Source: Mytilus trossulus
Taxonomy: Eukaryota
Direction: 5' to 3'
Assembly (NCBI RefSeq): GCF_036588685.1
Contig: NC_086373.1
Span: forward strand, 1,984,001-2,048,000
DNA: 64,000 bases
Both the position numbers and the translations under genes were made by a program. The notes under the pieces were generated by a model. The model did not search any database. It worked only from the letters and a program-made list of their open reading frames with translations, and was not told the origin of the DNA. Shown one piece after another: positions 1 to 45,521 of this stretch; positions within the stretch are counted from its first letter, which is position 1, and every line of letters starts with the position of its first letter.

Positions 1-580
1 ATGTGTCTTTTTTTATTGCTTTTTTATTATAAGATGGTGCTTTTCTATTATAAGATGGTGCTTTTCTATTATAAGATGGTACTTTTCTATTATAAGATGG
101 TGCTTTTCTATTATAAGATGGTGCTTTTCTATTATAAGATGGTGGTTTTCTATTATAAGATGGTGCTCTTCTATTATAAGATGGTGGTTTTCTATTATAA
201 GATGGTGCTCTTCTATTATAAGATGGTGGTTTTCTATTATAAGATGGTGGTTTTCTATTATAAGATGGTGGTTTTCTATTATACGAAGGTGGTTTTCTAT
301 TATAAGATGGTGGTTTTCTATTATAAGATGGTGCTTTTCTATTATAAGATGGTGGTTTTCTATTATAAGATGGTGCTTTTCTATTATACGAAGGTGCTTT
401 TCTATTATAAGATGGTGGTTTTCTATTATAAGATGGTGGTTTTCTATTATACGAAGGTGGTTTTCTATTATATGGTGCTTTTTTATTTTAAGGTGGTTTT
501 CTATTATAAGGTGCTTTTTTATTATAAGATGCTTTTCTATTATAAGGTGCTTTTTTTATTATAAGGTGCTTTTTTATTAT
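1..580. repeat. Minisatellite, 21-bp unit (ATGGTG(C/G)TTTTCTATTATAAG), degenerating to 18/15-bp units at the right end
   Basis: More than 20 tandem copies; the array start motif tgtgtcttttttattgctttt recurs at ~641. Confidence 0.95.
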
Positions 581-2089
581 GTGATGGTGGTTCCCGTGAT
601 TAACCGGAAGTGTGGGCTATGGAACGCCATAGCTGTCTTCTGTGTCTTTTTTATTGCTTTTCTATTATAAGATGGTGGTTTTCTATTATAAGACATGCCT
701 GTGTTGCTATTCAAGAATATGGTTACGAGTTGAAAATATACGGACAACTAAATGGCAAAAAAGACCACAAGACAAACATCATATTGAAACATAAAGACCG
801 ATCAACACTAATCACAGACCATAATAATCTGAAATGACCTCATGTGCTCCAGAACGGTAAGCAAATACTGGTCCCCATGTGGCACCCGTCGTGTTGTCAT
901 GTAAGTTCAAACACAATGATGAGTCTATTAACATTCGAGGAAAATTGGTCGGGGTTCTGGTAACGATAATTTGGACATATCCGTCCTTATCTGTAAAACA
1001 CAGATTTCATCATCAAATGTGCATATACACCATTAAAATTCGTCACATGTGAATATTCATCGTCAATTTCCTTTGCCAAATTTATGTTGATGTGTAGTGT
1101 CAGCTGAGTTTTATTTTTAAGGTTATAACTTATATTTGTTTTATTTGCTATCGGAAATATAGATAAACCTTAAACATGCGAAACATTACATAAATATAGG
1201 ATCCTTAGGGTGAAACCTTAGACCACAGTGTTTGGCTTAGTATTATGTAGGTAGTTTATACTAACTGCATGGTGCTTAATTTACCCTTATCTAAATGCTG
1301 ACATTCAACGTTATTTGGCACTGTTGCAGTGAGTTACGCTTCATGATCTTTATATGGTGACCCATATAGTTTTTATACATATTACAAGTAATATTTCTAC
1401 GAAGATAATAGTGTAAAATGGTTAAGATCTTAGTTCAGTCACAACTTTCTACAGCTAACAAACTTCAGTTAATTTTCACTACCTTCCATACTTACTTCCA
1501 ATGGGGAAGAATCTGTGTAAAACTACTGATGCATGTCTGTGCATTCTTCAATAACCATGACGATAACTTAATCTGCAGCTTTTATCAAGAAAACCAATGA
1601 ACCCCAACAAAAAGGTTATGGTCAATTGATAAAACTAATATGTTCACCTTGCATTTATTATACACCAAATATAACTTTCAACGTTACTGAAGAACCTAAG
1701 CAAGAACATTTAAAACGGACCTTTAATAATTTTTAAAAAGATGACAAGGTAAGAAGCCATTTACCATACCACTTTCACAGGCACTCACTCCTGTCAGAAG
1801 GACATGCACAACTTCAGTGCATCCATTCCATAGACAAAATATGATTGACTCGTCAACTCGTAACTGAAAAACTGACAAAACGAAGACAATACTTATGAGC
1901 ATAGCTTCATCAACTGATTTATATGCGTCATCACATGGAAGCTAAAATCGAAGCGTCCGTTGATTTTTTCATCAACTTCCATTAAACATTATTCCAGTTT
2001 CCTGGTATGACTCGAAAAAGTACAAAGATATTTCCCCTAGGGGTGGCACAACCAAGATTTAGATGGTCATAATTCAAAACAAACCTAGT

Positions 2090-10553: not shown

Positions 10554-10979
10554 TACATGGAAGATAAATATATCACGTGTACATGGAAGATAAATATATC
10601 ACGTGTACATGGAAGATAAATATATCACGTGTACATGGAAGATAAATATATCACGTGTACATGGAAGATAAATATATCACGTGTACATGGAAGATAAATA
10701 TATCACGTGTACATGGAGGATAAATATATCACGTGTACATGGAAGATACATATATCACGTGTACATGGAAGATAAATATATCACGTGAACATGGAAGATA
10801 AATATATCACGTGTACATGGAAGATAAATATATCACGTGTACATGGAAGATAAATATATCACGTGTACATGGAAAATAAATATATCATGTGTACATGGAA
10901 GATAAATATATCACGTGTACATGGAGGATAAATATATCACGTGTACATGGAAGATACATATATCATGTGTATATGGAAC
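10554..10979. repeat. Minisatellite, 26-bp unit ACATGGAAGATAAATATATCACGTGT, about 16 copies
   Basis: Near-perfect tandem units at 10555, 10581 ... 10945. Confidence 0.97.
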
Positions 10980-29570: not shown

Positions 29571-29988
29571 TCAGTGTCTTTTGTACTGGAAATAGTCTGT
29601 ATCTGATTGTTGTGAGTTGTACCGGGAATTTCTATTGGAAACATAACTGCTAGCTTTGCTTGGTTGAGGTGCCGGATATTTCTTAAATCCGGACAGTCCA
29701 GCATATTTAGAGTCCTGGTTTACTCTGTTCGGACTATGTCTAGGAGTAGAACTGGTTCCGAATGTCGATTCTCCGTAAGTCTTGTTGTTAAACCTCTGGT
29801 CTTCTACTTCCATCATTTCATCGGTAGTAGAATCCGATACCTTCCGAATCTTTATAAAATCCTGTGTAGCTATCGACGACGGTACATCATTAATAAAACC
29901 CGTGCTATGCACGAAATCATCGCTACAGAACACTGTAGAAATGGCTTCTGAAGTTAAATCAACGTTCTTTCGGCTCTTATATAGAACC
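29571..29988 (-). CDS. Gene B exon 7, cytoplasmic tail
   Basis: Basic stop-transfer VLYKSRK; SKYAGL, KYPAPQPS; ends YFQYKRH*. Confidence 0.8.
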
Positions 29989-32900
29989 CTAAACAAAAAC
30001 AAAATAATATTACTAGTAATAGTTTGTATAGAGATTTCCTTCAGACCATTTGGACTAGTGATATGAACGCACAACTTTATTAGCAGGTGCTTGTTTTGAA
30101 TCTAACTAGGCATGTAATTTTTTTATTTATCTAATTATAATCATTTAATGATGAATATCGATATTTATACTAAAACTAGAAGAAGAAAAAAACACTAACA
30201 AAAAAGATCGACCTTTTTAAGATCTGATCGGTCTTTGGTCCAGTGTAAACGGGTAAGATCGATCTTCAATCGGACTTAAAAAGTCTACCTCTAATGGTGG
30301 TTTTAAAAAGATCGATCTTATTTGAATCGATCTTTTTTTCAGGTGTTTGTTATATTTAGATAGGAAAATAAAGGTCTGACCGGTTCTTTTTATGTTGTAT
30401 AGTGTAAACGCACTAGATTAAATAATATCGATCTCAATTGATCCTGCTTATGCAATGAAAACGCGAACTGGTCTTTTTAAGGTCGATTCAAAAAAAGATT
30501 GATTCAATTTCGTTGTCAGTGTAAACGGGGTCTTAGTCGTGATTTTTTTACGCTTTCAAGTAAAATATTTAGATTGGTTTTCCCAAATTTTCTGTAAATT
30601 GTAAATACTTTATTATACACAATTGAACAACTTTTTATATCAACAGCAGACCCACAATTCAACCTATTTTTATCATTTAAATTGAAAATATCAAAGGATA
30701 TCGCATTCAAAGTGAAATATTGCTTAAAAAAGGGGTACTAGATTGCCTGTCCTCATTTCCGTTTTTACCAAATAATGTTACTGTTATAATTCGTCCATAT
30801 TATATTTTTTTCTAGAATTACCTGATAATCATCAGAGCAATGATGATAACCGCCAAAGCAAATAGGGAAATTGTTATTCCAAGGGCTATCGTGGAATTGG
30901 GATTATCTGTAAATAAAAATTATAAAAATATAAACTGAATCATATGATAAATTCCCATCCTACAATTTTGAATCAACTGCAAAAAAAACAGACTGCCAGC
31001 TGTCAATAGTTATAAGAAGATGTTGTATGAGGGCCAATGAGACAACGTTCAATAAGTAAAAAGTCTAGTAAAAAGTAAACCAAGTACGGTCTTCAACACG
31101 GAGCCTTTGCTCACACCGAACAGCAAGGATTCAAAATTACTAGTGATAAAGCATTTAAAGAGGTCTAATCTATTGAAAACGAAAAAAAGAGAAACTCGTA
31201 TGAACCACATCAACAAACGATAACCACGGAACAAAATGTTCCTGTTGAGTGCTCTTGTGTTTGTCCGTATACCTGTCACATAGTTGTCATTTCAGCTATA
31301 TATTTTTTAACATTACCATACAAGCGTGAGGTTTGGCTAACCATAAAACCAGAATTTAATCCCTGACTTTTTTTCTAAAAAAAAATGTCTTGTAGCAAGT
31401 CAATAATTTGAGTCATTGATAGCTGTTATACAAAATCAAGTAGATCATTTCTAAGTTTGTATGCGTTTGTTTTTTATGCATGTCAGTGATTATGTTGTTC
31501 CGTTGTCATCCTCTTATAGTTGATGTGTTTCGTTTGGTTTTAAATTGTAATATGGAGTTATTTATCTCAATCGATTAATGACTTTTGAACAGCAGAATAC
31601 TGCTATTGCCTTTATCCAGGACATGTTTAAACAGATGCAGCGGGGTTTAACGCTTTGACAGGCGCCAACCTTCATCATAACCTGAGGTAGCTTTCCTACC
31701 TTGTCTTATAATATTGACTTACTTTTCTATATTAAGCAGGTAATGAGATATTAGTATGACTTTTGCTCTATAAATTGAGATACTTTTGGTTGAATCATAA
31801 ATTGATGTTCCCCACCCCACTTTCAGTCTAATCTTACACTACTGTTTATTTCGTTAGCTTATAAAGTTGAAACAACGATGACAATTTACCTTTCTTTGTA
31901 TTTTCTTGTTTAACATCAACAGTTGGAGATGTCGACAGATCTTTGCTATCTGTAAAAGAAAGAAAAAATGTCAGAAATTGTAACTTTATTCGGTAATACC
32001 ATGTCGTTTTTTTTATACTGAAACAGGGAAACATGCGAAAATAGCTGCTGATTATAACTCTATGAACATTTTCTAAAGATTATTTAGCATCAGTTCATAG
32101 GATTACTAAGTGTTGACCAAAACATGATAACACCACAAGCTTTTGCTTGGATATACTTGCCTCATTTTCAAAAAATTGATATCGCTGCATTTTTTTTTCT
32201 CGCCTTGTTATTTGATAGACAAGATAGTAGTAATTAACATTTCACCACTGTTTAAGGTGTGTCCGTGTTGGCTAATCTTTAGTTTACCATGTAATGTTTG
32301 TTAAACTATTGTTTGTCTTTTCGCATTTTTATTTATTTTAAAATAGGGCTATGTGTTCTTCAAATTATGTTTTACCGTCATAATATTAACTGAAACTTTA
32401 ATACTGTACTATATCATAGTTTTGAAACATATGTAGATCTTAGTAACTAGACCAACACTGATAAAATGAAAGAAAGTTAGGTACCTGGTGGCTCTGACAC
32501 GTTCGCCTTAAAAGTTGTTAAACTGTCTGCTATGGTATAGTGAACTTTACTTGGCACAACCGAAATCACTTTTAAGATTTTTGGGGTGGTATTCGAAAAA
32601 TTGAGTGGCAATATACTTTGAAGAGCTGATGTTGAAGATAAGAGTTCCATGTTTGTTGTGATAAAGTTTGGTTCTTGGCTACTAAACAAAATTTGATTAT
32701 TCGGGGAAACAAATCCAGACGAGGAACCAGTTGTATAGAAATTAAGATTACCAGTTGTTTGAAGGTCGATTTTGTTCGAGATAACAACCCCTGATACATT
32801 TGACAGCGTCGGGGTATAACTGGTAAACGGTGAAGATTCTGTTGTAGACGGTTCTAAATTTGTAAGATAGTTTTCCGTTTTGGTTGATGGTTTCTCTGTC

Positions 32901-35900
32901 GTAGTTTGTCTTCCCAATTCGGTTGTAGATCCGACTGTTACACTATCTAAACATAAACAAACAAAAAGTTGCGTGCAAATATCCCGACGAAGTTAAAAAA
33001 GGATAACTTGCAAAGTATTCGTAAGTTAAATACTTATTCTATACTTGCCAGCTATAAGAATTAATAAGACCAAATTTACTTGACTTTAATGTATTTTCTA
33101 TATAAAAATCCTCTTACACAATTTGACTGTTTATTTGTTTGTAATTTGTGTTTCAGATTCATTCTGTGGTCAAAGATACTTAGAATAATATTTTGAAGTA
33201 CTACAAGTTTGGTAGGCACATAGCAAATTTTAGGAGAAATAAAAAAAAACATGAATTGCGAACAGATCTGTATAGTCTTGTTTAGATATGCTATCATTTT
33301 AAACTATGTTCTCAAAAAGATCTTGTGTGTTTGCGGGTTTATCATTTGTCTTGAATATTTTGATACTTGAGACTCATTAATCACACCAAGTGATGTTGTA
33401 CTTTGACTTACTACATTATATATATAACATCATTATCATTGTTTTGTGTTATGGTGTTAAGTGTTAGTTGTTGTACCTTTTCTATTCAAAACAATGAAAG
33501 TCGTGTTCCTGCACGAGTCGTTCCTCGCAAAACTAAGTATATACTTGTTTCCTAGATGTATAGCAGTTTTGGTGACATTTAGACGAAACAATGCTCTTTT
33601 ACGACTAGTCGTGAGATTGTAAAGTAGGCCGGAATTGCAGTCTTGAAGCCATAACGAAGGGCTGCACTCCAATGGTAAAATAAGAATGGTTATTGAATAC
33701 AATGAAGAAGCATTTTGAAATGCAATGTTTTGAGTTTCTTTGCTATTGATCTTGAACTGTCTGTGTGTTGAATCATATATCTGACCTGTTAAAATAAAGA
33801 TATTTAGTATTTCATATTGAAACTACATCGTATTTAACCTAACTCCGATTATTAAAGTTAGTTTATTTAAACATTGATTTGACAATTCATCAGAAAGTAA
33901 GAACTGCTCCCTCTTTTATTGCAAAAGTTGAATTTTAATTCGTATAATGATATGTCTCTGTGTAATATAGTTCTGTCCTTTATGGTACCGATTTTCTACT
34001 ATAAAAATGTAGTAAATCGAAGTACCATACATTCTGCAAAGTATGTTTACGAACTAAAACAACTGCGTTCAGACAATAATAGGACATTCCAGATAATTGA
34101 GGATACTAATCCGACTTTTTCACTTTTCGTGTCGTATCGCTGTCTAATGCGGGGTTCACACATTGCCGATTATTGCTCCCGATTGAGATCAGACAGCAAT
34201 ACGACACGAAAAGTGAAAAAGTCGGATTAGTATCCTCAATTATCTGGAATGTTCTATCATTGTCTGAACGCATTCGTTTTAGTTCGTAACAGATTCCTAC
34301 GGATCGGGAAGGGTCCGAATAGTTCGGCAAAGCATCCCGACAGTTAGGTGCGTCCCGTAACATTCGGGGCAACTCAGCCGATTTTGTCTAGTCGGATTAC
34401 AATCGTGGCTATGTCGTGACAGATTCTGCTGTATCGGATCGAATTCCGAACAATGTCTTGTGTATTCTGGACGGTGTCCTGTGGAACGGGAATGATCTGG
34501 AGTAATTTTTCATAGTTGTTTTTCTGCCGATTGAGTCCAGATTGCATCCAGATCTTGTCGATTGCGAACCGTTTTTTGCCGAAACCGTTCCGAAACAGTC
34601 CCGTTATTAATACGAAATTCGTCAATGATACCCACGTCAGAGTCCCGACAATTACAGAATACAATACGACTGAGACCAGACAAAGCCGTTTGCAATGCGA
34701 TAGAGCGGACTATGATAGGATTACGTTCCGACAGTACTTGATCATCCCGAATATGCCGACAGTTTTCGAACGGATAACTTCCGTCAGCGTCGGTTCACTG
34801 TCCGGTCACTGTCTGATCTCAGTCGGATAACATTCGGTAGAGTCGGGACGCAGTCGTGACAGACTCGGTCGAATTTTACCTGGCGAAAAATACAAATCGG
34901 ATTAGAAGCGGATTCAGAACGGTATTATCGGGACTAATTCGCTTAGAAACGGTTGAATATCGGTGCTTCCTGAATACTATCTGATTGTTGTCGTGATCAA
35001 ATTATTTTTTTTACAAATTTTAATTTAAGTTTGAATTTCCATCCACGATTCACAGGATCTTGATCAGACTTTTAATAAATTTTAATCGGGAATGGTCCTG
35101 TCAAGAACGGTAGTAAAAATCGTGAATGTGTGACCCCAGCTTAATCTAAAACTGGAGCAATAATCGGCAATGTGTGAACCCCGCATTACCTGGTGAAATT
35201 CGATCGAGTCTGTCACGACTGCGTCCCGATTCTTCCGAATCAAATTCGATAGAAATCAAACAGTGACTAGACAGTGAACCGACGCTGACGGAAGTTATCT
35301 GTTGGAAAACTGTCGGCATACTCGAGATGATCATGTACTGTTGGAACGTAATCCTATCACGGTCCGCTCTATCGCATTGCAAACGGCTTTGTCTGGTCTC
35401 AGTCGTATTGTATTTTGTAATTGTCGGGACTCTGACTTGTGTATCATTGACGAATTTCATATTAATAACGGGACTGTTCCCGAACGGTTTAGGCAAAAAC
35501 GTTTCGCAATCGGCAAGATCTGGATCGAATCTTGACTTAATCGGCAGAAAACAGCAATGAAAAATTTCCCAAGATCATTCCCGTCCCACAGGACACCGTA
35601 AAGAATACACAGAACATTGTTAGGATTTTGATCCGATACCGTCAGCATAATCTGTCACGACACAAGCACGACTATCATCCGACTAGACACAATCGGATGA
35701 GTTTCTACGAATGTTACGGGACGCCCATATATAATTGTCGGGGTGCTTCGCCGAACTATTCGGACCCTTCCCGACCTGTAGGAATCTGTTACGAACTTAT
35801 ACGACTTTGTTCAGCTAATGATAGAACATTCGAGATAATTGAGGACAGTAATCCGACTTTTTTCATTTTTCGCGTCGTATCGCTGTTTGGTCTCAAACGG

Positions 35901-37940
35901 GAGCAATAATCGGCAATGTGTGAAAGTCGCATACGAGACATAGTAAGGCCGTTAGTTTTAGGCCCCACATAAGGAACATAATAAGGCCGTCTCATTGGCA
36001 ATAATACCACATCATCTTTTAATATATACATATGTAGTAGAAATAAAATTAGTAGTGAACTTCTTTTTTCAAAGTCGAAATTTGGCATTTCAAATCTGTA
36101 AATTTCGATTTTAACTCGAAATTTTAACTTTTAAAATCTCGAAATTTTGACTTTAACTTAAAACTTTGACATTCTTTGATCTTGAAATTTATTCAAACCA
36201 AAAATTTCTGTCAACATGCATGTTCTTTCCGAATGAAAAAAAATCAAATTTACAATTTTTACTTATTCGGAATTCAGAAATTTGAGAAGGTCAAAAATTT
36301 GGGAGTCAGTCGAAATTTTAAAATCTGGAATGTCAAAATTTCGAATTTGAAAAATATTTCATTACAAATTTTATGTTAACCATGTCCCTAATACGCTTTC
36401 GTAAGAAATACTTTGAAAAAACAAGGGTTCATGCTTTTTATTAGATATATATATACTATTGGGAGTAAAAAACCAGCGAATTGATCTTTTGATAATAAAA
36501 AACAAATGTTTGGACTTTAACGGTGCTTTTTTGTGGACTTTAGCGGAACTTGTTATTGTGGACTTTAACGGCGTATTCTTGTGGACTTAAGCGGAGGTCA
36601 TTTTGTGGACTTTAGCGGCGTTGTGGACTTTAGCGGAAAATTGTTGTGGACTTTAGCGGTGTTGTGGACTTTAGAGTAATTTTGGACTTTAACGGTGCCA
36701 CAATGGTATATTCTACTATTAAATGTATTGTGTAGCGTGATTTTCGATTAATATTCATTTCAGTGTTTTGTAACGATATTTCATGATCTTTATTAAAGGT
36801 TGCATTGCACAGAAATTAACAAGTTACCGCGACCAAATTAAACGTAATTCATGGCTAACAATTTCGGCCATGTATATATAATAAATTGTTTTTAGATTCG
36901 GACGCATTTTTGAGAGAGAATCGAATTTCACAATCTGTATACATTTGTTAGTTAATACATATTTTATCTTACCGCTGTGGCATGAATGTTTGGTACCATT
37001 AGTTACATGTTTGGTATTAATACTATTTACTGCATTGCCTGAAAAATAATACCGGGATTTGAAGGTGTTATATCAGAATGATTTAAATATCACATGTGTA
37101 TGTATATACTAGTATACGGACAGACTTGGCTATCGTGTAAAAAAGCTAACATCTAGAGATGCTTGAGAAATTCATGTTCAGTGGCAAGTATCATGATCAG
37201 GTTCATAAAAAACACGGGATGTTATATGGTGCATATGGGTGCAACCACGCAAAATCAGTAAGTCCCTAAAATGTTAGTTAACAAGACACCGTAGTATGAA
37301 CCCTGCCTTTCTGAAACCCCTTTGGCAATAGTGTGTCTATATCTCTAAAACACCATATAAAGAAACATGCATTAGCATATCTCGTAAAAAAATGAGATAC
37401 GTACAATTGTCCATGATTTAGAAGGTGGTATTAACAAGGTTACAAAAAAATAACATTGTTACATCTATGAGTCTTCCAACTAAAAAGAAGAATTCATACT
37501 TTAAACCAAAAAATAATACTGCAAGTAGTAATTTGTATGACTCTTTTGGATTTGGACTACCAATTAAGTGTAGCACTGCTGGCAAGTTGTATGGATTGCT
37601 CCTTGTATCTTTGATGCTTATCAAGACACTCGAGTAAGTCTTTTGACGTTATTTTAACATTGAGGGTAGAATATACGTTTTCACAATATTATAAACAGCC
37701 TTAAACCAAATGCAGTCACGTCAATGTTTATACACAAAAAATGGGATATTAAAAATATGTTTGTGATATACTTTTTTTATATTGATTGATATTATTTAAG
37801 TTTACAGTCTAACAACGTTTTTACCAAATAAAGTAAGAAATTAAAAAGGTTATAGGTTCGATATGAATTTAAAAAATACCTTTGACTCCTAATATCACCA
37901 ATTGTAACCAGCAAGCAGACATTAACAATTTAGACTCCAT
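29571..37940 (-). CDS. Gene B: uncharacterised type I membrane protein, 486 aa (signal peptide, N-glycosylated beta-rich, possibly CUB-like ectodomain, Ser/Thr mucin stalk, TM, ~135-aa Tyr-rich tail)
   Basis: Exons 37880-37940 (MESKLLMSACWLQLVILGVK), 36973-37038, 33477-33785 (GQIYDSTH..LECSPSLWLQDCNSG..YILSFARNDSCRNTTFIV), 32485-32946 (S/T-rich), 31890-31949, 30822-30906 (TM IALGITISLFALAVIIIALMII), 29571-29988 (tail). All GT-AG, phases 1,1,1,1,1,2, 1461 nt open throughout. Confidence 0.83.
30200..30533. mobile_element. Harbinger-like MITE remnant in the last intron of gene B
   Basis: Repeated agtgtaaacg and (g)atcgatct motifs; terminus cagtgtaaacggggtct followed by tag. Confidence 0.5.
30822..30906 (-). 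CDS. Gene B exon 6, transmembrane helix (not in the ORF track)
   Basis: DNPNSTIALGITISLFALAVIIIALMIIR; tttacag acceptor, AG|gtaatt donor. Confidence 0.8.
32485..32946 (-). CDS. Gene B exon 4, mucin-like stalk
   Basis: Ser/Thr/Pro-rich 154-codon exon, phase 1-1. Confidence 0.8.
33477..33785 (-). CDS. Gene B exon 3, globular ectodomain
   Basis: ttttaacag acceptor, AAAG|gtacaa donor; sequons NAS, NLT, NVT, NDS, NTT; 3 Cys. Confidence 0.78.
34148..35141 (+). mobile_element. PIF/Harbinger-like MITE, 994 bp, TAA TSD
   Basis: Imperfect TIRs TGCGGGGTTCACACATT / AATGTGTGACCCCAGCT; TAA at 34145-34147 and 35142-35144. Confidence 0.8.
35187..35930 (-). mobile_element. Inverted, truncated older copy of the same Harbinger-like MITE
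   Basis: Diverged reverse complement of ~34148-34885; ends gggagcaataatcggcaatgtgtgaaagtcgca. Confidence 0.8.
36505..36702. repeat. Array of (G)TGGACTTTA(G/A)CGG units, probable subterminal repeats of a MITE end
   Basis: About 9 copies, ending ..ggactttaacggtgccACA; same architecture as the element at 42512-43290. Confidence 0.7.
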
Positions 37941-39415
37941 ATCCGTTCCATGAAACAAGTATCTTTGACTAACACAACAAAGGAGACAGGTGGAACGTGA
38001 TCGTATCTGTATTCTTTATCTCCACTAAATATTATATTTACTTCTTTATCTTCTAGTATCAAACTCTTTGTTTAAGAATGATACATGCGTACTCCGTTCA
38101 TTTTTTTCCCATTTTTTAACGAATGATCAATGTTCTTCTATTTATCGTTTTTATTTTTTTATTGTTTGAGCCTCAGTCTCCTTCCACTTTTTATCTTTAT
38201 GATTAGTTGTCGGGCCCCTCTCCCCCCCCCCCCCCCCCAAAAAAAAACCAACCCCACACACACAAAAACACATGGTTGCACAAAAAAATACAGCTAATTG
38301 AGTACCCGTAGGCCAACTTAAACTGGTGTAAAACTGATACAGGTGCTTGGGAAAGGTCTACAGTTCGAGCTTCACTAGTGGCACCCGCCTTTTGTTCAAA
38401 TCATTTGATAAGTCATATATCATTAACGCTGATAGACAACATATAAAAGCAGATTTGTATATATCTCTCCCTTTTGTCAAAGACATTACTTTACAGAGGT
38501 GTTTTTTCTCAAAAAATATTTTCATGACACATGCAGGAACAGACTCGTTTCCCACCTTTCGGTACTACATATGCAAGCAATAGGAAACATGGACTACAGT
38601 CTCCTGTGAACGATGAGATCTAAATCAAAGATGGCGTAAAATAATAGTTTTGAATGGAAATATAGGAAACACGTTCAACACATATCATTATGTAACTGGT
38701 ATAATACCACTGGCACTGTCTCGTCTCTGAAGATCTCTGAATATACATTTAGTTTAAAAGTTTAGCAACCGACAACTATCTTCAAAATCATGACATAAAA
38801 CGCGGTATAAGGTTTTGATTTTCGTATTAACATTGGAGATACATGCTCTTCATATGTTTTAAAGATTTCACATTTCCATTTTAGATGAATCGTATTGTTT
38901 ATGAACAGAAATGATTCTGACAGCCTAAAAAACAAATATTTCAAAATTTGTACAATACATAACCTGGCCTAAACAATCGTTGGTGTGATTGTAATATTAT
39001 CTTAATTTTTTTGGAAAGCATTTTGACCGCCTTCCTTTGGCCGTTCTTTAGACCGAAAATTCAAATTGTAAAAAATTATCAAAACTATCAATTTCATTTT
39101 ATATTTCATTTCAATCTTTTTATTTATATTCAGAATATAGAAGCAATTACTTTATTTGTGGTAAAGAGTTTTATTATTTGTAAAACAACGAGAAATTTAT
39201 GGAAATATTTGTGAAAAGAGGGGTGACTATCAATTATATTACGATTTTCACTACAACAAAGTATCGATCCTTTAGCTGATAATGTTCTTTTTGCATATAT
39301 CTAAAATACCTTCAAGGAATAAACATATTAGATAAGATATTCAACAGGTGTAAGATAATATACAAACAAACAAATAGTATACAACTGTGACCAGAATGAC
39401 AAAAGATGACAAAAG
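37941..39415. promoter_or_regulatory. Putative shared (bidirectional) promoter region between genes B and A
   Basis: Start codons diverge 1476 bp apart; several AGATAA/TTATCT sites and CAGGTG E-boxes (~37987, 38340, 39345); TSSs not determined. Confidence 0.4.
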
Positions 39416-42400
39416 ATGATATTTGTTGACATTGTTATATCTGTGACTATTTTGCAGTTTGTCGAGGCTACACTGAAAGATGGTAAGTGAATGTATTTGA
39501 CGGTGAAGGGCATAACTTAGGCCGTACGGTGACCTATAGTTGTTTGTGTCATTTTGGTCTTTTGTGGATAGTTGTCTCATTGGCAATCATACCACATCTT
39601 CTTTTTTATATAGTCTTTATTTTAAAAGAGGTATGACAAATTATCACTGTATTAGCTTTGCTTGTTCAGTAAAAGTGTAAAGTTGAAAAACTCTAGACTA
39701 AAAGATACTTGCTATTAATAGATGCAACATACCAATCTCTCAATTTCGGTATAATATGAGTGGCTAAAGCCTGGGCTCTTAACAAATACTTCAGAAAAAT
39801 TGGTGTAAATGGCCCTTCAAGGGAACTATGTTAATTTCAATATGTTACTACATGTGTTGTTACTTCTGAAATTAAGTGTGCAGAATAATTCACCAATCAG
39901 TAGAATTAATATTATTTTGATAATTTGAGGGGCCAAATAATACCCCATTTGCCGAAATCGATCCAAATTGAACTTCCTGACAACCAGAAAAGTTTTAGTT
40001 TTTCTGATAGATTGTACAGATAGATTTAATGTCCAGTGACAGCCATTTAAGGAATATTCGGGAAGAGAATGATCAAACCATTTATGCAATAGGAAAGCTC
40101 TTCAAAATGTGTAGGATAGTATCAAAACTAAATAACCTGTTTATTTTTCGTATTTTGTAGGTTGGTGTGACAAATATTCCCAGAGATCAACTAAATTACA
40201 AGAAGATATATCTATCAGAGAGTCTTCACATACTCAATATCCAAACTGTCAATGGCAAGTTAAATTTGAAAACGCTACAAAACTATTAATGGAAGTTAAG
40301 ATTGACCAAATGCCTTTCAATAATATCATCGAATACGGCGGTTTTCAAGGACAAAAACATACAGTCAAGTATGATAAACTAACAATTATAGAAGGGGATT
40401 GTAACCATGGAAACGCTACAATATCTTTTTCGGAAACGGTTCAAACTACAACTAGATCTATAAACGCTGGTGCCATATGCTTCCAGTATAAATCGGAAAG
40501 TGATAGTTATACGGACAACAGGCTTCAAATCCGTATTCGACTTACAGTTAAAGAAGTGAAATGTAGAAATGAACAAATTCATACAGATTCTACCGCGTGG
40601 TGTAAAACAGTTTGTTTTCCTGATGATAGAACAAGAGAGGACTGCCAAATGCCCATAACAAAATCCAGTAGGTATAAGTTATCAAGCTCAACTAAATCTA
40701 GTAGTTACGTGAAGTACAGAGATATTTACCGCTTTTTTAATTCTTGTACTTCTTAAGTTATTGTATATTTTTTGGAATATGTTTATTTAAAAAAAATATT
40801 CTTGGTTGTTACAAGTGAGCATTTGAAAAAGACCGTCATACTATATCTGAATGAATAGAAGTCGTTCACAGAACAGCAAATATGTAACAAGTACATTTTT
40901 ATGGACGTCAAGTTGGTTACTTATTCCCTATTCCCTATTCGTTACCTATTCCCTATTCCCTATTCATTTCTTATTAGGTAACGAAAAGGTAACGAATAGG
41001 GAATAGGGAATAGGTAACGAATATAAGGGAATAGGGAATAAGTAACCAACTTGACGTCCATTACATTTTTCTTATATATAATTTAATGTAGCTCAAAAAA
41101 ATAAAATGTTCGTTTTGTAATAAAAAGCCCTATTCCATTTAGACTTTCAGAACGAATTTAAACTCTTGCTAGGTTCAGTTCTGTCCTTGCAAAATTTCTT
41201 GTGGTAAAATTAGTTTTGCAACACGCTTTTAGTCAGTTGTTGGCACCACTTTATTACTAATCATATGAATTTGCTTTAGATACAAATCAACTGTCTACAA
41301 CAAAGGAACTTCAACAAACAGGAATGATCAAAAATTTTAAATCAACATCTAAACCTACAAACACAGCAAATACAAAGATGGCAGAATTACCAGAGACTTC
41401 GACTCAAGCACCATCTACAACCAGTATAAACGTCTTCTCACAGAAACAAACTACTGATGATATCTTAACAACGCATTACAGAAACAAAGTTCATTTGCCA
41501 TCTAAGGCACCAATAGAGGCAACCACTCATACAAACATTGTTGTATCAATTGGAAGGACTAGTATCACTGTATCTGATGGTAGTACCGTCTCTGATGGAA
41601 GGAACAATATCACAAAACCAACTCTACCACCTGATGTATACAACAATAACTCCTGTTCAAACCAGTATAAATCTTCTATGACAAAGAAAGGTAAGGTTTA
41701 TTGTTACATACGTCTTCAGATACCATGTAGATAGAAGTTTTAGTCAAAATAAGAAGAAAAAAACATATGTGTATATACTTTTGTTGTAGAAGGTAATTAA
41801 AGACTAGAAATGTTAGTAAAACCGTTTTTTTTTTGGTAATGGAATAAAATATTTGTACCTCAAACAAGTGAGGATGGCATGTTTGTTGTACTTTAAATTA
41901 TAATCTCCGAAAGGATTTATCGTGTGAAATCTACGAAATCTATGAATCTAGAAAAATAAGAAATGAATGTTGATGTTAACATAAAAAATAGGTGCTCCGC
42001 AGAGCGCAGCTTTATACGACCGCAAATGTTGAACCTTGATCATATGGGGCAAGTATGGACACAACATTCAAGCTTGATACAGCTCTAAATATGGATTGTG
42101 ATCAAATTTTTAACATTATATAGGTTTCTGTGCAACAAAAGATTTCTTCTTGAGACTTTTCAAAAATATGAAATTCGAGAAATTTTGAAGAAAAAATGAA
42201 ACTCCTTTAAAAAATTGGCCCCCCTCCAACTTTTGAACTCCCCCCCCCCCCCTTGGAGCAATTACCCAAAAACTCTTTCCCAGCCTTTCCATTGTAGTAT
42301 ATATGAAACCTTGTACAATTTCAGAGAGATCCATACAATTTAACACAAGATATTGGCTGTCTGCTATGGAGACTAGAAAAATGCTCGTTTTCAGCTCTTT

Positions 42401-45400
42401 TTGGGGCCCCTTATTCCTATATATTCCAAAAAAACCAACCCCAAACTGAATCCAAGCCTTCTCTTAGTTATATGGAACCTTGTAGTACAATGACAGAGAC
42501 ATCCATACATTTGTAGGACTCTAAAGTGCGATGGTCACGCTAAAGTACAATGGTCTACACTAAAGTACGATGGTGTATCACGGCGCGACGCTAAAGTGCG
42601 ATGGTTGTTTTGTAAATACGAACGTACGATTGTATATCACGCTTAAGTGCAATGAACCAATGTAGTAAGGTTCGAGGGATTAGAGCTAATTTCCTAATGC
42701 TTGTAGAGTAAGACTTTAGTCAGCTTGCTTGCATATATGCAATATTCGCATAGTTTTCTTCTTCGTAATGAGTACAACTAGATATAGGTAGATGTTATAT
42801 GAGTGCCAATTAGATAACTTTTCATCCAACTGCATTAATAATTTATAAAAGTAAACGATTATAAGTCAAGATACGACCTTCAACACAAAGGTATCACTAC
42901 ATGTTATATTTATCTACACTGTACAAAATAATGTTTTAGCGGACAATTTATGATTTACGCATGAATCTACTAAATAACGAAGGAAAATGGTCGATACTTC
43001 AGCCAACAAAGCACGGTTAGGTTTAACTTAAGAAAGTCATGGACATTTCGTTTAAAGTTATTTAAAATCAAATACATTTTTTTGTATTTTTAACTTTTAT
43101 CTTTCGGCTTGTTCATTTTTCGTTTGTATAAACGACTGTTCACGTCATAATTCATTGTACGTTTATTACGTCTATACTTTCGCGGACAATCGCACTTTAG
43201 CGCATGTAGGCATCGCACTTTAGCGTAGACCATCGCACTTTAGCGTGACCATCGGACTTTAGCGTCCCCATCGCACTTTAGAGTCCTACACATTTAAACA
43301 CAAATTATCATCCGGTAACTTGAAAAATGTTTGTTTTTGACCCTTAATTTCAAAACTGTTTGACCCATAACCCGTAAATTAAATACCAGTCTTCTAATTA
43401 TGTTATTCCATATTGATAAAATATTAGTAGGTTTTCTATATGAATGGGATTTTGAATAAATAAGCATATTCACCTGAGGAAAAAGGATATTCACCGCGCA
43501 AAACGTCGCGTGCTTTTACATGTATAATTTTGGTAAAAAAAACGTTTGATGTACAATTGGTTTGGGTAAATATTTTCCATTACAATAATTTCTCTCGGAA
43601 TATGGAATAAAACATTTACTGTCTTTTGTTTCGGTAAATATTTGGTTTTATTGACTTTTGAAAAACGGATATTCACTTCGGCCGTTGGCCTCAGTTAATA
43701 TCAGTTTTTCAAAAGTCAATAAAACCAAACATTTACCTCACCAAAAGACAGTAATTGTATAGTATTTAACAGTGTAGTACAATTTCAGAGCAATTGAAAT
43801 ACTAATACACAACTTATTGTCCTACTTGTTTTGGCCCCAAATTCTTTAACCATTTGGACCATAACCCGCTTTTGTGGTTATAAACATTGTGTTAAAATTT
43901 TATTGATTTCTATTCGCTTATACTAAAGTTATTATCCGGAAACCATCTGTCTTCGGACGACGCTGAAGACGACGGCGACGACGACGCAGACGACGATGTG
44001 ATACCAATATATGATAATAGAAAAAATTTGATTTTAGATTTAAATATTGTAGGTGCACAAACATTATTCTCGAATAATCTTGCATTATTGTTCACCACCA
44101 AAGTTTTTTCTTATTCTAACTTTTATTTAACAGACTTACAGACTGGACTATACATATCCAGTACCATAGCGGGAGTATTTACTGTTACTGTCATAATCTT
44201 GTTGATTTGGTAAGTTGTTTGTTATTTTGACAATGAGTTGTTACACAAAGATGTCAGTAACTATCTTATCTATAGTCCTCTGCATCTAACTTCTTTGTAA
44301 TGGGATAAAAAGTCTCATGATTTCTTATCCAAATGGTCCAGCACATTTAAGTTATACAAGTACACTAAGCTATGAAAAATGTATCATCTGGTTTTCTCAT
44401 TCTCATTACTGATTTCTTGTACAATGGTTGTGTCAACTGATTATCAAAACAAAATTGGACTAAGTTTCTCAAATCGAAATGAAAATACCCCCATCTTCTT
44501 TCCATTAGAAGAAAATCGATTTTAGAATCAAGTAATCAATATTTTAACTATAAAGGATTGCACAAATTTCGAAAACTGAAAAAAAATGCTGTGGAAATGA
44601 ATTTCAGTCTAAATCATAGAAGTGGACAATGAAGGTGACATTTCCAACACTTCTTTTATCTCTTTTCACCAAAACTACTACAACTAGCTTTACTGTTAGT
44701 GATATTTTAAAAGTCTTCACTTTTGAACCTCCAGATTTTAAAATGACCAAATTTGAGTTGGCAGCTTCGACTACAGACTGAAAGTTCAAGTTTACGGGTT
44801 AACCCCTTGTAAAGGCTTGTAAGTATGGAAAAGTTATATGTTGAGTACAGCTTAAAAATAAGAATGCCTGATCCATCCATAAAAATGCTGGTATTTAACA
44901 TACTTTAGACATTTTGGTCCCCTAATGTCTATTTAAAAAGTTTAATTATAATGTTATAATCCATCTGTAAAGGCTATCATGGATAAAAATAAGTTTATAT
45001 TTTTTACTTTCAGTTGTGTGAAGAAAACAAAAGATGTGGAGAAACTGACAACAATTATGGTTCATCTATCTAGATCTAAGGCCATGGCAGATCATAATAA
45101 ACTGCAGAGAATACAGATGAGTAGCTGGTCTTCTGCAACCTCTAGCGTGAGACCTACATTGCCTCCACGTCCTCTCGACCTTCCTAGTATTGGTGATACA
45201 AAATCTCAGTCTGAAATAAGCCCTTATCGCTACAGTGATGAAGTATATGATAACATAGGAAACATTCGTAGACATGATAAGTCCAGAAGTCATGAAAATT
45301 CAGCACTAAATCTTTTAAAACAGCTTTCAAGTAATACTACACAGACACAATGTCAGGGAATTGATAATGACCATTCATCAACAAGTAGTGGTAGAAGCCA

Positions 45401-45521
45401 CAAAAATCAGTCTGATGACCAAAGAAGCATTGGTACGCACAGTCATGGGAGTGGTGTTTATATTGACAATACATCTATCAAATCCAATACTTACAGACAA
45501 GTTCACAAAGTTAGACATTAA
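39416..45521 (+). CDS. Gene A: uncharacterised type I membrane protein, 522 aa (signal peptide, divergent CUB-like domain, 4-Cys module, Thr/Ser mucin stalk, TM, ~165-aa cytoplasmic tail)
   Basis: Exons 39416-39482 (MIFVDIVISVTILQFVEATLKD, donor gtaagt), 40161-40667 (WCDKY..YPNCQWQV..KYDKLTIIEG..ICFQYKSESDSY..LQIRIRL, CUB-like), 41280-41690 (T/S/P-rich, donor gtaagg), 44134-44209 (TM GLYISSTIAGVFTVTVIILLIC, donor gtaagt), 45014-45521 (tail). All GT-AG, phases 1,1,1,2, 1569 nt open throughout. Confidence 0.85.
40161..40667 (+). CDS. Gene A exon 2, divergent CUB-like ectodomain
   Basis: Frame is open upstream of the ORF-track start at 40289, back to the ttttgtag acceptor; CUB-like motifs C..YPNCxWxV, YDxLxIxEG, FxYxSxS. 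Confidence 0.8.
40901..41061. mobile_element. 161-bp foldback MITE with 9-bp TSD (Mutator/MULE-like)
   Basis: TIR ATGGACGTCAAGTTGGTTACTTATTCCCTATTCCCT...; perfect TSD TACATTTTT at 40892-40900 and 41062-41070. Confidence 0.88.
41280..41690 (+). CDS. Gene A exon 3, mucin-like stalk
   Basis: Thr/Ser/Pro-rich; tttag acceptor, AAAG|gtaagg donor. Confidence 0.8.
42512..43290. mobile_element. Non-autonomous DNA transposon with TGT..ACA ends and 4-bp TSD (Ginger-like)
   Basis: TIR TGTAGGACTCTAAAGTGCGATGG / CCATCGCACTTTAGAGTCCTACA; TSD CATT; subterminal CTAAAGT(G/A)CGATGG repeats at both ends. Confidence 0.85.
43616..43754. repeat. Foldback palindrome (~68-bp arms, 3-nt loop GGCC-GTT-GGCC)
   Basis: ttactgtcttttg..ggttttattgacttttgaaaaa..cggcc / ggcc..tttttcaaaagtcaataaaacc..caaaagacagtaa. 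Confidence 0.8.
44134..44209 (+). CDS. Gene A exon 4, transmembrane helix
   Basis: DLQTGLYISSTIAGVFTVTVIILLIC; ttaacag acceptor, TG|gtaagt donor. Confidence 0.8.
45014..45521 (+). CDS. Gene A exon 5, cytoplasmic tail
   Basis: Basic stop-transfer CVKKTK, PTLPPRP, VYDNI; polypyrimidine tract and cag acceptor. Confidence 0.8.

What the first reader, a model, noticed from the sequence alone, without database searches (positions are those of the whole stretch)
29571..45521. Head-to-head pair of orphan CUB-like/mucin type I receptors: candidate paired-receptor system
Seen in sequence: two complete spliced genes, mostly invisible in the ORF track, diverge from a 1.5-kb intergenic region. They share an architecture (signal exon, globular exon, S/T stalk, separate TM exon, single tail exon) and an intron-phase pattern (phase 1 throughout the ectodomain, phase 2 right after the TM). 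Residual sequence echoes are DCNxG in both globular domains (EGDCNHG / LQDCNSG), the same pre-TM exon end ACA AAG AAA G|gtaa (TKK) and STIA at the start of both TMs. Overall identity is otherwise very low. Inference: ancient inverted paralogues, probably co-regulated. Their tails differ in kind: gene B has an ITIM-consensus motif, gene A has SH3/SH2 adaptor motifs. This recalls vertebrate paired inhibitory/activating receptors or a two-chain receptor, but built on an unfamiliar CUB-mucin scaffold. I do not recognise either protein as a named family.
Basis: partly seen in the sequence, partly recalled or inferred. Interest (0 to 1): 0.8.

Follow-up and report, generated by a model that had tools for sequence, protein, structure and literature searches.

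The report
Two head-to-head mussel membrane glycoprotein genes
Two neighbouring mussel-specific genes pointing away from each other each encode a sugar-coated cell-surface protein with a signalling-type tail; both look real, but there is no sound evidence that they are duplicates or a matched activating/inhibitory receptor pair.

Summary
The sequence observation holds. The genome is Mytilus trossulus. Gene A (+, 39416-45521, 5 coding exons) and gene B (-, 37940-29571, 7 coding exons) diverge from start codons 1,475 bp apart. Both follow the same plan: signal peptide, Cys-containing domain, S/T-rich stalk, separate TM exon, one tail exon. Introns are phase 1 through the ectodomain and phase 2 after the TM.

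- **Gene A junctions:** three are confirmed exactly by intron-less contigs in four runs.
- **Gene B exons:** all seven match full-length M. edulis and M. galloprovincialis proteins.
- **Copy number and range:** both genes are single-copy. Relatives were found almost only in Mytilus.
- **Gene A domain:** a divergent CUB domain (hhalign 66%, E 5.5e-5 against CUB domains of this genome; weaker fold, language-model and Pfam support).
- **Gene B domain:** no detectable CUB similarity (0.25%).
- **A versus B:** no significant similarity by BLASTP, Smith-Waterman or hhalign. The only non-trivial echo is an identical 14-mer at both pre-TM donors.

Paired-receptor criteria fail: the ectodomains are unlike, no TM residue is charged, both tails are long, and there is no gene family. 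The ITIM consensus arises in 25% of shuffles. The genes are uncharacterised lineage-specific receptors, of modest interest.

The parts
39416..39482 (+). Gene A exon 1: start codon and signal peptide (MIFVDIVISVTILQFVEATLKD + 1 base, phase 1)
   Evidence: Direct reading. tblastn of the M. galloprovincialis orthologue P0001, residues 1-23, at 96% identity. Donor ATG|GTAAGT. The junction to exon 2 is not among the joints listed.
40161..40667 (+). Gene A exon 2: divergent CUB domain (about residues 1-132 of the exon) plus a 4-Cys C-terminal extension; 8 conserved Cys
41280..41690 (+). Gene A exon 3: S/T-rich (31%) stalk, ends ACA AAG AAA G|gtaa (TKK), phase 1
   Evidence: Joints 40667>41280 and 41690>44134, GT..AG, in four runs. 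Composition.
44134..44209 (+). Gene A exon 4: transmembrane helix (LQTGLYISSTIAGVFTVTVIILLI), no charged residue, ends in phase 2
   Evidence: Joints 41690>44134 and 44209>45014 in four runs. Translation.
45014..45521 (+). Gene A exon 5: 168-aa cytoplasmic tail with PTLPPR (class II SH3-ligand consensus), YDNI (YxN) and YRQV; stop at 45519-45521
   Evidence: Contigs cover it. The motifs are conserved in P0001. Single copy.
37880..37940 (-). Gene B exon 1: start codon and signal peptide (MESKLLMSACWLQLVILGVK + 1 base, phase 1)
   Evidence: Python scan for ATG, hydrophobic stretch and phase-1 donor. 95% identical to the N-terminus of M. edulis P0022.
36973..37038 (-).
   Evidence: Present in P0022 and P0027. 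Found intact in the window by tblastn, with AG and GT flanks.
33477..33785 (-). Gene B exon 3: 102-aa globular exon (LQDCNSG; 3 Cys, 5 N-glycosylation sequons), fold undetermined
   Evidence: 84-88% identical to P0022 and P0027. No Pfam hit, no PDB hit, no CUB similarity. Single copy.
32485..32946 (-). Gene B exon 4: S/T-rich (33%) stalk
   Evidence: Its 3' part and the junction to the next exon are in the RefSeq model P0019 of this genome.
31890..31949 (-). Gene B exon 5: mini-exon SKDLSTSPTVDVKQENTKK, ends ACA AAG AAA G|gtaa, phase 1
   Evidence: Joined exactly so in P0019, P0022 and P0030.
30822..30906 (-). Gene B exon 6: transmembrane helix (NPNSTIALGITISLFALAVIIIALMII), no charged residue, ends in phase 2
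   Evidence: 100% identical to P0022. Almost invariant in the four Mytilus species aligned: one I/V in M. coruscus and one L/V in M. galloprovincialis.
29571..29988 (-). Gene B exon 7: 138-aa cytoplasmic tail with 8 Tyr (SKYAGL, KKYPAP, DYFQY and others); stop at 29571-29573
   Evidence: 100% identical to P0019. 93-94% identical to the M. edulis and M. galloprovincialis proteins. All 8 Tyr are invariant in the four species. Single copy.
37941..39415 (.). 1,475-bp region between the two start codons: candidate shared, bidirectional promoter region. Holds a C17 A9 tract at 38222-38247.
   Evidence: Coordinates. Contigs of gene A carry 431-508 nt upstream of exon 2, which is more than the 67-nt coding part of exon 1. 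Where the remainder maps was not shown. Promoter function was not tested.
41681..41694 (+). 14-mer ACAAAGAAAGGTAA at the donor before gene A's TM exon. The identical 14-mer lies at 31886-31899 (-) before gene B's TM exon.
   Evidence: The only two occurrences in the window, against 0.00 expected in 100 shuffles. 94 occurrences in the 1.3-Gb genome.

Best explanation
These are two real, single-copy genes for single-pass (type I) cell-surface glycoproteins, with relatives found almost only in Mytilus. They are transcribed divergently from a 1.5-kb shared upstream region. Each protein is targeted by a cleavable signal peptide. Each displays a small disulfide-bonded, N-glycosylated beta-rich head on a mucin-like S/T/P stalk, crosses the membrane once, and ends in a 140-170-aa, probably disordered, tail.

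Gene A's head is a strongly diverged CUB domain followed by a 4-Cys knob. Gene B's head is an orphan domain of unknown fold.

The most likely working mode is inferred, not shown. The heads would bind an extracellular protein or glycan ligand. The tails would act as docking scaffolds. A's tail carries a PxFPxR SH3 ligand and a YxN site. B's tail carries eight invariant tyrosines, including YxxL and YxxP sites. This resembles vertebrate CUB-type scaffold receptors such as CDCP1, which Src-family kinases phosphorylate before it recruits partners (PMC4395315).

The two genes are neighbours and may share regulatory DNA. They are not demonstrably duplicates, and they do not form a paired activating/inhibitory receptor system in the accepted sense.
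For: Shown:
- Exact spliced junctions of gene A in four runs.
- Full-length orthologues for both genes with the same exon order, and the RefSeq model of this genome for the 3' half of B.
- Canonical splice sites and phases, S/T content, glycosylation sequons, and uncharged TM helices.
- Single copy in the 1.3-Gb genome.
- Only three homologue clusters for A's domain among 1.84 billion representatives. B's relatives were found only in Mytilus.
- A's head is CUB-like.
- B's TM and tail are almost invariant across four Mytilus species, while its head (84-88%) and stalk (about 75%) vary. This points to purifying selection on the intracellular part.
- A's PxxPxR and YDNI motifs are conserved in M. 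galloprovincialis.
- Of the 33 listed coding differences in gene A, 16 are synonymous and 17 non-synonymous, giving pN/pS of about 0.29. The gene is therefore constrained.

Inferred: ligand binding, tyrosine phosphorylation, adaptor docking.
Against: - There is no expression evidence for the 5' half of gene B in this species. RefSeq models of B in M. trossulus and M. edulis start inside the stalk.
- Pfam CUB is below threshold, and a family profile finds no PDB sequence.
- The short linear motifs in the tails are common by chance.
- No ligand, tissue or phosphorylation data exist.
Confidence: 0.57

Rival explanations
1. One reading: A and B are ancient inverted paralogues that stay together because they work as one co-regulated unit. 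That unit would be either an antagonistic (ITIM versus adaptor-motif) pair or a two-chain heterodimeric receptor.
For: - Head-to-head orientation, with start codons 1,475 bp apart.
- The same module order and the same intron phases.
- An identical 14-mer at both pre-TM donors, rare in the genome, followed in both by a split Asp codon and STIA.
- ESM features place B's head loosely near the CUB, CRF-BP_N and CUB_2 clusters (0.75-0.78) and A's near CUB.
- SKYAGL is invariant in four species.
Against: - No pairwise or profile similarity anywhere.
- B's head fails the CUB profile test that A passes.
- The genes differ in exon count (5 vs 7), in how the heads are split over exons, and in Cys pattern (8 vs 4).
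- Phase-1 introns are generic for ectodomain modules (own knowledge).
- The 14-mer was picked post hoc.
- The defining features of paired receptors are not met (PMC3533184): the ectodomains are unlike, no TM residue is charged, both tails are long, and there is no multigene cluster.
- The ITIM consensus arises in 25% of shuffles.
Confidence: 0.15
2. Both are mainly structural membrane mucins (glycocalyx, lubrication or barrier on epithelia or haemocytes). On this view the tail tyrosines serve as YxxF endocytic or sorting signals rather than phosphotyrosine switches.
For: - The stalks are 31-33% S/T with 8-11 Pro and several N-glycosylation sequons.
- YAGL, YDNI and YRQV fit the YxxF consensus.
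- The ectodomains evolve faster than the tails.
Against: - The stalks are short (136-172 aa) and lack tandem repeats (one search lists none there).
- B's whole 138-aa tail is almost invariant, which is more than sorting signals require.
- A's tail conserves a full PxFPxR site.
Confidence: 0.15
3. Gene A is a CUB-type auxiliary subunit of an ion channel or another receptor, in the manner of NETO, SOL-1 and LEV-10 (own knowledge). Gene B would be an unrelated neighbour.
Against: - No sequence similarity to those families.
- They lack a mucin stalk and have LDLa or several CUBs (own knowledge).
- The gene is restricted to mussels, whereas the known channel partners are widespread.
Confidence: 0.05
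4. In M. trossulus gene B no longer makes the full protein. Only a 5'-truncated transcript, from within the stalk exon onwards, is used, as the RefSeq model has it. The signal and head exons would then be relics.
For: The RefSeq model of this genome begins at an internal Met of the stalk exon (242 aa). Two M. edulis RefSeq models are also truncated, at 177 and 319 aa. A 1.9-kb foldback element sits in the intron upstream of the head exon.
Against: - All seven exons are open, in phase, and flanked by good splice sites in the window.
- Head identity to congeners is 84-88%, without stops.
- Full-length models exist in M. edulis and M. galloprovincialis.
- A type I TM protein without a signal peptide is unlikely to be the functional product.
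Confidence: 0.08

Closest known systems
CDCP1 (CUB domain-containing protein 1) and DCBLD1/2 (ESDN): vertebrate single-pass CUB-type scaffold receptors
   Same: Type I glycoproteins with CUB or CUB-like ectodomain modules. Their tails act as phosphotyrosine docking platforms. [quoted passage not shown] The DCBLD tails use YxxP sites (own knowledge). Gene A has a CUB-like head plus PxxPxR and YxN. Gene B has YxxP (KKYPAP) and YxxL.
   Different: No sequence homology was detected. Here there is a single head domain on a mucin-like stalk. CDCP1 has three CUB-like domains, and DCBLD has CUB + LCCL + discoidin. Relatives were found almost only in Mytilus. Phosphorylation was not tested.
Canonical CUB domain (Pfam PF00431), e.g. 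Kremen, MASP/C1r/C1s, neuropilin, TSG-6, spermadhesins
   Same: Gene A's head aligns in register with genuine CUB domains of the same genome, through the CxW motif and the YDxLxIxxG strand. It gives CUB domains as most of its best fold matches.
   Different: It falls below Pfam's threshold. It has a 10-residue insertion. It lacks Cys at the canonical positions of the second disulfide in the hhalign alignment. It adds a 4-Cys extension. Gene B's head shows no CUB signal.
Vertebrate paired activating/inhibitory receptors (KIR, LILR, PILR, SIRP, CD300/MAIR, Siglec pairs)
   Same: Adjacent genes for type I receptors, one of which carries an ITIM-consensus motif.
   Different: Paired receptors have nearly identical ectodomains. 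The activating member has a short tail and a charged TM residue for an ITAM adaptor, and the genes lie in multigene clusters (PMC3533184, PMC2211832, PMC2803305). None of this holds here.
Membrane-tethered mucin-like sialoglycoproteins (e.g. CD164/endolyn, podoplanin, CD34 class)
   Same: Signal peptide, S/T-rich O-glycosylation stalk, single TM, and a tail with tyrosine-based motifs (own knowledge).
   Different: These have no CUB-like Cys head, their tails are usually short, and there is no homology.

Membership tests
CUB domain (PF00431): gene A head | Score over Pfam's gathering threshold (21.4 bits) | tested here: not met
   No hit at E <= 10 for the window's exon or for P0001. The 41%-identical homologues P0003, P0007 and P0017 reach 14.6-14.7 bits, E 0.04, profile positions 26-101.
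CUB domain (PF00431): gene A head | Profile similarity to genuine CUB domains, in register (CxW; YDxLxIxdG) | tested here: met
   hhalign of 7 single-exon CUB domains of this genome (A3) against the gene-A family (A1) gives prob 66%, E 5.5e-5, over 72 columns. The strength is moderate.
CUB domain (PF00431): gene A head | Beta-sandwich jelly-roll fold of CUB | tested here: inconclusive
CUB domain (PF00431): gene A head | Four Cys at the canonical positions (two disulfides) | tested here: not met
   The first pair fits (Cys2 and Cys29, the CQW motif). In the hhalign alignment the canonical third and fourth Cys columns face Val and Ser. The family's own conserved Cys80 and Cys106 lie elsewhere.
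CUB domain (PF00431): gene B head | Any sequence or profile similarity to CUB | tested here: not met
   Pfam finds nothing at E <= 10. hhalign against the same CUB profile gives prob 0.25%. ESM features score only 0.75-0.78 for the CUB, CRF-BP_N and CUB_2 clusters, which is below lead level. The Atlas's own model has pLDDT 0.44.
Paired activating/inhibitory receptors | Highly similar extracellular domains in the two members | tested here: not met
   BLASTP E 0.25-0.41. hhalign 0.1-0.2%.
Paired activating/inhibitory receptors | Activating member with a short tail and a charged TM residue that recruits an ITAM adaptor | tested here: not met
   Neither TM segment contains K, R, D or E. The tails are 168 and 138 aa.
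Paired activating/inhibitory receptors | Inhibitory member with a functional ITIM | tested here: inconclusive
   There is one consensus match, SKYAGL, invariant in four species. The consensus arises in 25% of shuffles of the tail. Phosphatase recruitment cannot be tested here.
Paired activating/inhibitory receptors | Members of a clustered multigene family | tested here: not met
   Every exon tested is single-copy in the 1.3-Gb genome.
Bidirectional (head-to-head) co-regulated gene pair | Divergent orientation with a short shared upstream region | tested here: met
   The start codons at 37940 (-) and 39416 (+) are 1,475 bp apart. The transcription start sites are unknown.
Bidirectional (head-to-head) co-regulated gene pair | Correlated expression, and conservation of the arrangement in other species | not testable with these tools

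The most novel reading that the evidence does not exclude
A and B descend from one CUB-mucin receptor gene by an old inverted duplication, of which the identical pre-TM exon end is a relic. They have been kept head to head in mytilid mussels because they act together, as a heterodimer or as an opposing signalling pair. That would be an invertebrate, non-immunoglobulin counterpart of two-chain or paired receptors.
Probability: 0.1. Interest if true: 0.6.

Novelty: new member of a known kind. Interest (0 to 1): 0.27.

Why it matters
If the best reading is right, the locus adds two lineage-restricted cell-surface receptors to the mussel repertoire. One shows how far a CUB domain can drift and still be recognisable. 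The other has an orphan head, but its cytoplasmic tail is almost frozen across Mytilus, which marks it as a good candidate for finding a mussel-specific signalling route.

Both already exist as 'uncharacterized' or automatically named models in public annotation. The gain here is therefore a corrected exon structure for M. trossulus gene B, a tested domain call for gene A, and removal of the paired-receptor label. It is not a new kind of system.

Tried and rejected
- **Pfam on every exon at E <= 10.** Nothing relevant.
- **Single-sequence AF2 of A's head.** pLDDT 39, unusable.
- **Family profile of A's head against PDB sequences.** No hit. phmmer of B's head and of P0003 against PDB gave noise only.
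- **The search for homologous proteins with B's head exon.** Blank, but the length window excludes full-length kin. Orthologues were reached through the tail exon instead.
- **ESM Atlas.** The stored orthologues P0022 and P0001 were used instead.
- **The look-up of encoding contigs.** Closed. Head-to-head conservation in other mussels therefore could not be checked.
- **JGI metagenome scan with P0007.** No locus found.
- **Apparent juxtamembrane similarity** (TKKD..STIA..KxxK[DN]V[ED]xLT[TS]). Tested by Smith-Waterman with whole and partitioned shuffles and rejected as chance (707 and 1,319 of 2,000 shuffles reach the score).
- **hhalign hit of the CUB profile in B's cytoplasmic tail** (ISTVFCSDDFVHSTGFI, prob 6%). 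Rejected as spurious.
- **Positive selection on A's head.** An early rough estimate suggested omega near 1. The 33 listed variants give pN/pS of about 0.29 instead.
- **Literature and earlier scan notes.** Nothing on these genes.
- **Joined spliced models.** The window's exons were never joined for any search or fold. Exons were searched one by one, and stored full-length orthologues stood in for the joined proteins.


Full report
**What is there**

The window is chromosome-scale contig C1, 1,984,001-2,048,000, of a 1.3-Gb assembly. The species is Mytilus trossulus. Gene B's tail exon is 100% identical to RefSeq XP_063421016.1, 'uncharacterized protein LOC134706207 [Mytilus trossulus]'.

Reading both strands and checking by script gives two divergent genes.

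Gene A (+) has five coding exons: 39416-39482, 40161-40667, 41280-41690, 44134-44209 and 45014-45521.

Gene B (-) has seven: 37940-37880, 37038-36973, 33785-33477, 32946-32485, 31949-31890, 30906-30822 and 29988-29571.

All ten introns are GT..AG with pyrimidine tracts. All are phase 1, except the phase 2 intron directly after each TM exon. The start codons are 1,475 bp apart.

One correction applies. Gene B has a 66-nt phase 1-1 exon (NAVNSINTKHVTNGTKHSCHS) between the signal and globular exons. It supplies the fourth ectodomain cysteine, so B's head is split over two exons while A's is in one.

**Are the genes real?**

For gene A, contigs of four runs from two studies and two organisms were laid on 39400-45399. 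One organism is near-identical to the window and the other is about 93% identical.

- The contigs skip 40667>41280, 41690>44134 and 44209>45014 exactly, with GT..AG ends.
- They leave the non-repetitive intron bins at zero depth.
- Two contigs, of 2,346 and 2,169 nt, span exons 2 to 5.

These are therefore spliced transcripts.

Exon 1 is supported by the N-terminus of the M. galloprovincialis orthologue P0001 (VDI13165.1, 488 aa, MIYVDIVISVTILQFVEATLKDG-WCEKYS). The A1-A2 joint itself is not among the joints the tool listed.

- P0022 (M. edulis CAG2209676.1, 486 aa) and P0027 (M. galloprovincialis XP_076099684.1, 397 aa) contain all seven exons in order.
- All seven map colinearly and open in the window.
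- The RefSeq model of this very genome joins exons 4-5-6-7 exactly as read here. It starts at an internal Met of the stalk exon, and two M. edulis RefSeq models are likewise truncated.

Whether M. trossulus expresses the 5' three exons thus remains open. They are intact.

**Distribution**

Every exon tested is single-copy in the genome.

An exhaustive HMMER search of 1.84 billion cluster representatives with A's head found only three clusters:

- M. galloprovincialis, 86% identity
- M. californianus, 83% identity
- a 41%-identical cluster of unnamed ENA/JGI/Logan proteins from an unidentified source

B's relatives were found only in M. trossulus, M. edulis, M. galloprovincialis and M. coruscus. 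That search is length-limited.

**What are the heads?**

*Gene A.* Pfam finds nothing in the window's exon. It gives CUB as the only hit, below threshold, in the distant homologues (E 0.039). UniRef labels P0001 'CUB domain-containing protein'.

As a same-genome control I took seven genuine single-exon CUB domains of M. trossulus and compared profiles.

- Gene A's family matches with probability 66%, E 5.5e-5, over 72 columns.
- CxW and YDxLxIxxG are in register.

An AF2 model built on a 7-sequence alignment is only pLDDT 54.5.

- Foldseek finds nothing at E < 0.001.

ESM-Atlas features give CUB clusters as 9 of the 10 best named hits (0.88). Each of these lines is individually weak or moderate, but together they make a diverged CUB likely (about 0.8). 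It has non-canonical second-disulfide positions and a 4-Cys extension.

*Gene B.* The tests gave the following:

- Nothing in Pfam or in PDB sequences.
- 0.25% against the same CUB profile.
- Only sub-lead ESM scores for the CUB, CRF-BP_N and CUB_2 clusters (0.75-0.78).
- The Atlas's own model is poor (pLDDT 0.44).

Its fold is undetermined. Both structure-prediction jobs went to gene A.

**Are A and B paralogues?**

No test shows it.

- BLASTP exon by exon and between the full-length orthologues gives E 0.25 or worse.
- Profile-profile probabilities are 0.1-0.2%.
- The tempting similarity around the TM is no better than shuffles.
- DCNxG is a 5-mer with E 0.41.
- Shared phase-1 introns are what shuffled extracellular modules show in general (own knowledge).

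One item resists dismissal. The 14-mer ACAAAGAAAGGTAA occurs twice in the window, both times at the donor just before the TM exon. None was expected in 100 shuffles, and it occurs only 94 times in 1.3 Gb. It was noticed post hoc and no similarity flanks it. I take it as a hint of common origin of the C-terminal module. I put paralogy at roughly one in three.

**Paired receptor?**

By the accepted definition, such pairs have very similar ectodomains with opposite signalling. The activating member has a short tail and a charged TM residue that recruits an ITAM adaptor, and the genes sit in clusters (PMC3533184, PMC2211832, PMC2803305). Every testable criterion fails:

- The ectodomains are unlike.
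- There is no charged TM residue.
- Both tails are long.
- There is no gene family.

The ITIM consensus SKYAGL arises in 25% of shuffles of the tail, and the same sequence is also a YxxF sorting motif.

**How it most likely works**

Shown:

- Signal peptide, glycosylated Cys head, mucin-like stalk, single uncharged TM helix and long tail.
- B's TM and tail are almost invariant in four species, including all eight tyrosines. Its head (84-88%) and stalk (about 75%) vary.
- A's PTLPPR (class II SH3 consensus) and YDNI (YxN) are conserved in M. galloprovincialis.
- The listed coding differences in A give pN/pS of about 0.29.

Inferred: these are ligand-binding surface receptors whose tails are phosphotyrosine or proline docking scaffolds. 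They would be functionally analogous to CDCP1 (PMC4395315) or DCBLD2, without being homologous to them. Rival readings are structural membrane mucins, a CUB-type auxiliary subunit, and a 5'-decaying gene B. They are scored in the report sections.

**Limits**

- The Atlas could not read new sequences.
- The window's exons were never joined. Exons were searched singly, and public full-length orthologues stood in for the joined proteins.

**Verdict**

The genes are already present in public annotation as uncharacterised proteins. They are new members of a known kind, of modest interest.

Noticed in passing
window 34047-35932: A foldback element of about 1.9 kb made of nested inverted repeats. The arms reach 311 nt at 90% complementarity, and GC is 43% against about 32% around it. 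It lies in gene B's 3.2-kb intron between the 66-nt exon and the globular exon. It may explain why automatic models lose B's 5' exons.
   Followed up: partly
window 42506-43296 and 36511-36674: A MITE-like element in gene A's intron 3. Its 50-57-nt terminal inverted repeats are built from 'ACTTTAGCG...' sub-repeats of about 19 nt. A tandem array of the same GGACTTTAGCGG motif lies in gene B's intron. It is probably one repeat family.
   Followed up: partly
window 40889-41073: A palindromic element rich in TATTCCC/GGGAATA units, in gene A's intron 2. It is covered by many contigs in two runs, so it is a dispersed repeat.
   Followed up: no
window 39541-39612, 41993-42199, 43800-43999: Short stretches inside gene A's introns with summed contig depth up to about 1e5 in transcript-like runs, and many loose ends. 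They are highly abundant, apparently transcribed, dispersed repeats.
   Followed up: no
window 40191-40283: Run X1 holds two haplotypes of gene A's CUB exon. One is identical to the window. The other differs at 9 of 120 bases and shares those letters with the contigs of the second organism. This could be introgression within the Mytilus edulis species complex or an old shared polymorphism.
   Followed up: partly
window 29571-37940 (gene B): The RefSeq models of gene B are N-terminally truncated in M. trossulus (242 aa) and M. edulis (177 and 319 aa), although all seven coding exons are intact here. Full-length models exist only for M. edulis CAG2209676.1 and M. galloprovincialis XP_076099684.1.
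   Followed up: yes
   Followed up: partly
window 17-589 and 10554-10978: Two clean minisatellites: 21 bp x 28 copies (89% matches) and 26 bp x 16 copies (96% matches).
   Followed up: no
window 38222-38247: A C17 A9 homopolymer tract in the middle of the region between the two start codons.
   Followed up: no
G000:C2:51340224-51427584: A dense array of at least 20 CUB-domain exon matches within about 90 kb on contig C2. It is a very large multi-CUB gene or a gene cluster, seen while collecting reference CUB domains.
   Followed up: no
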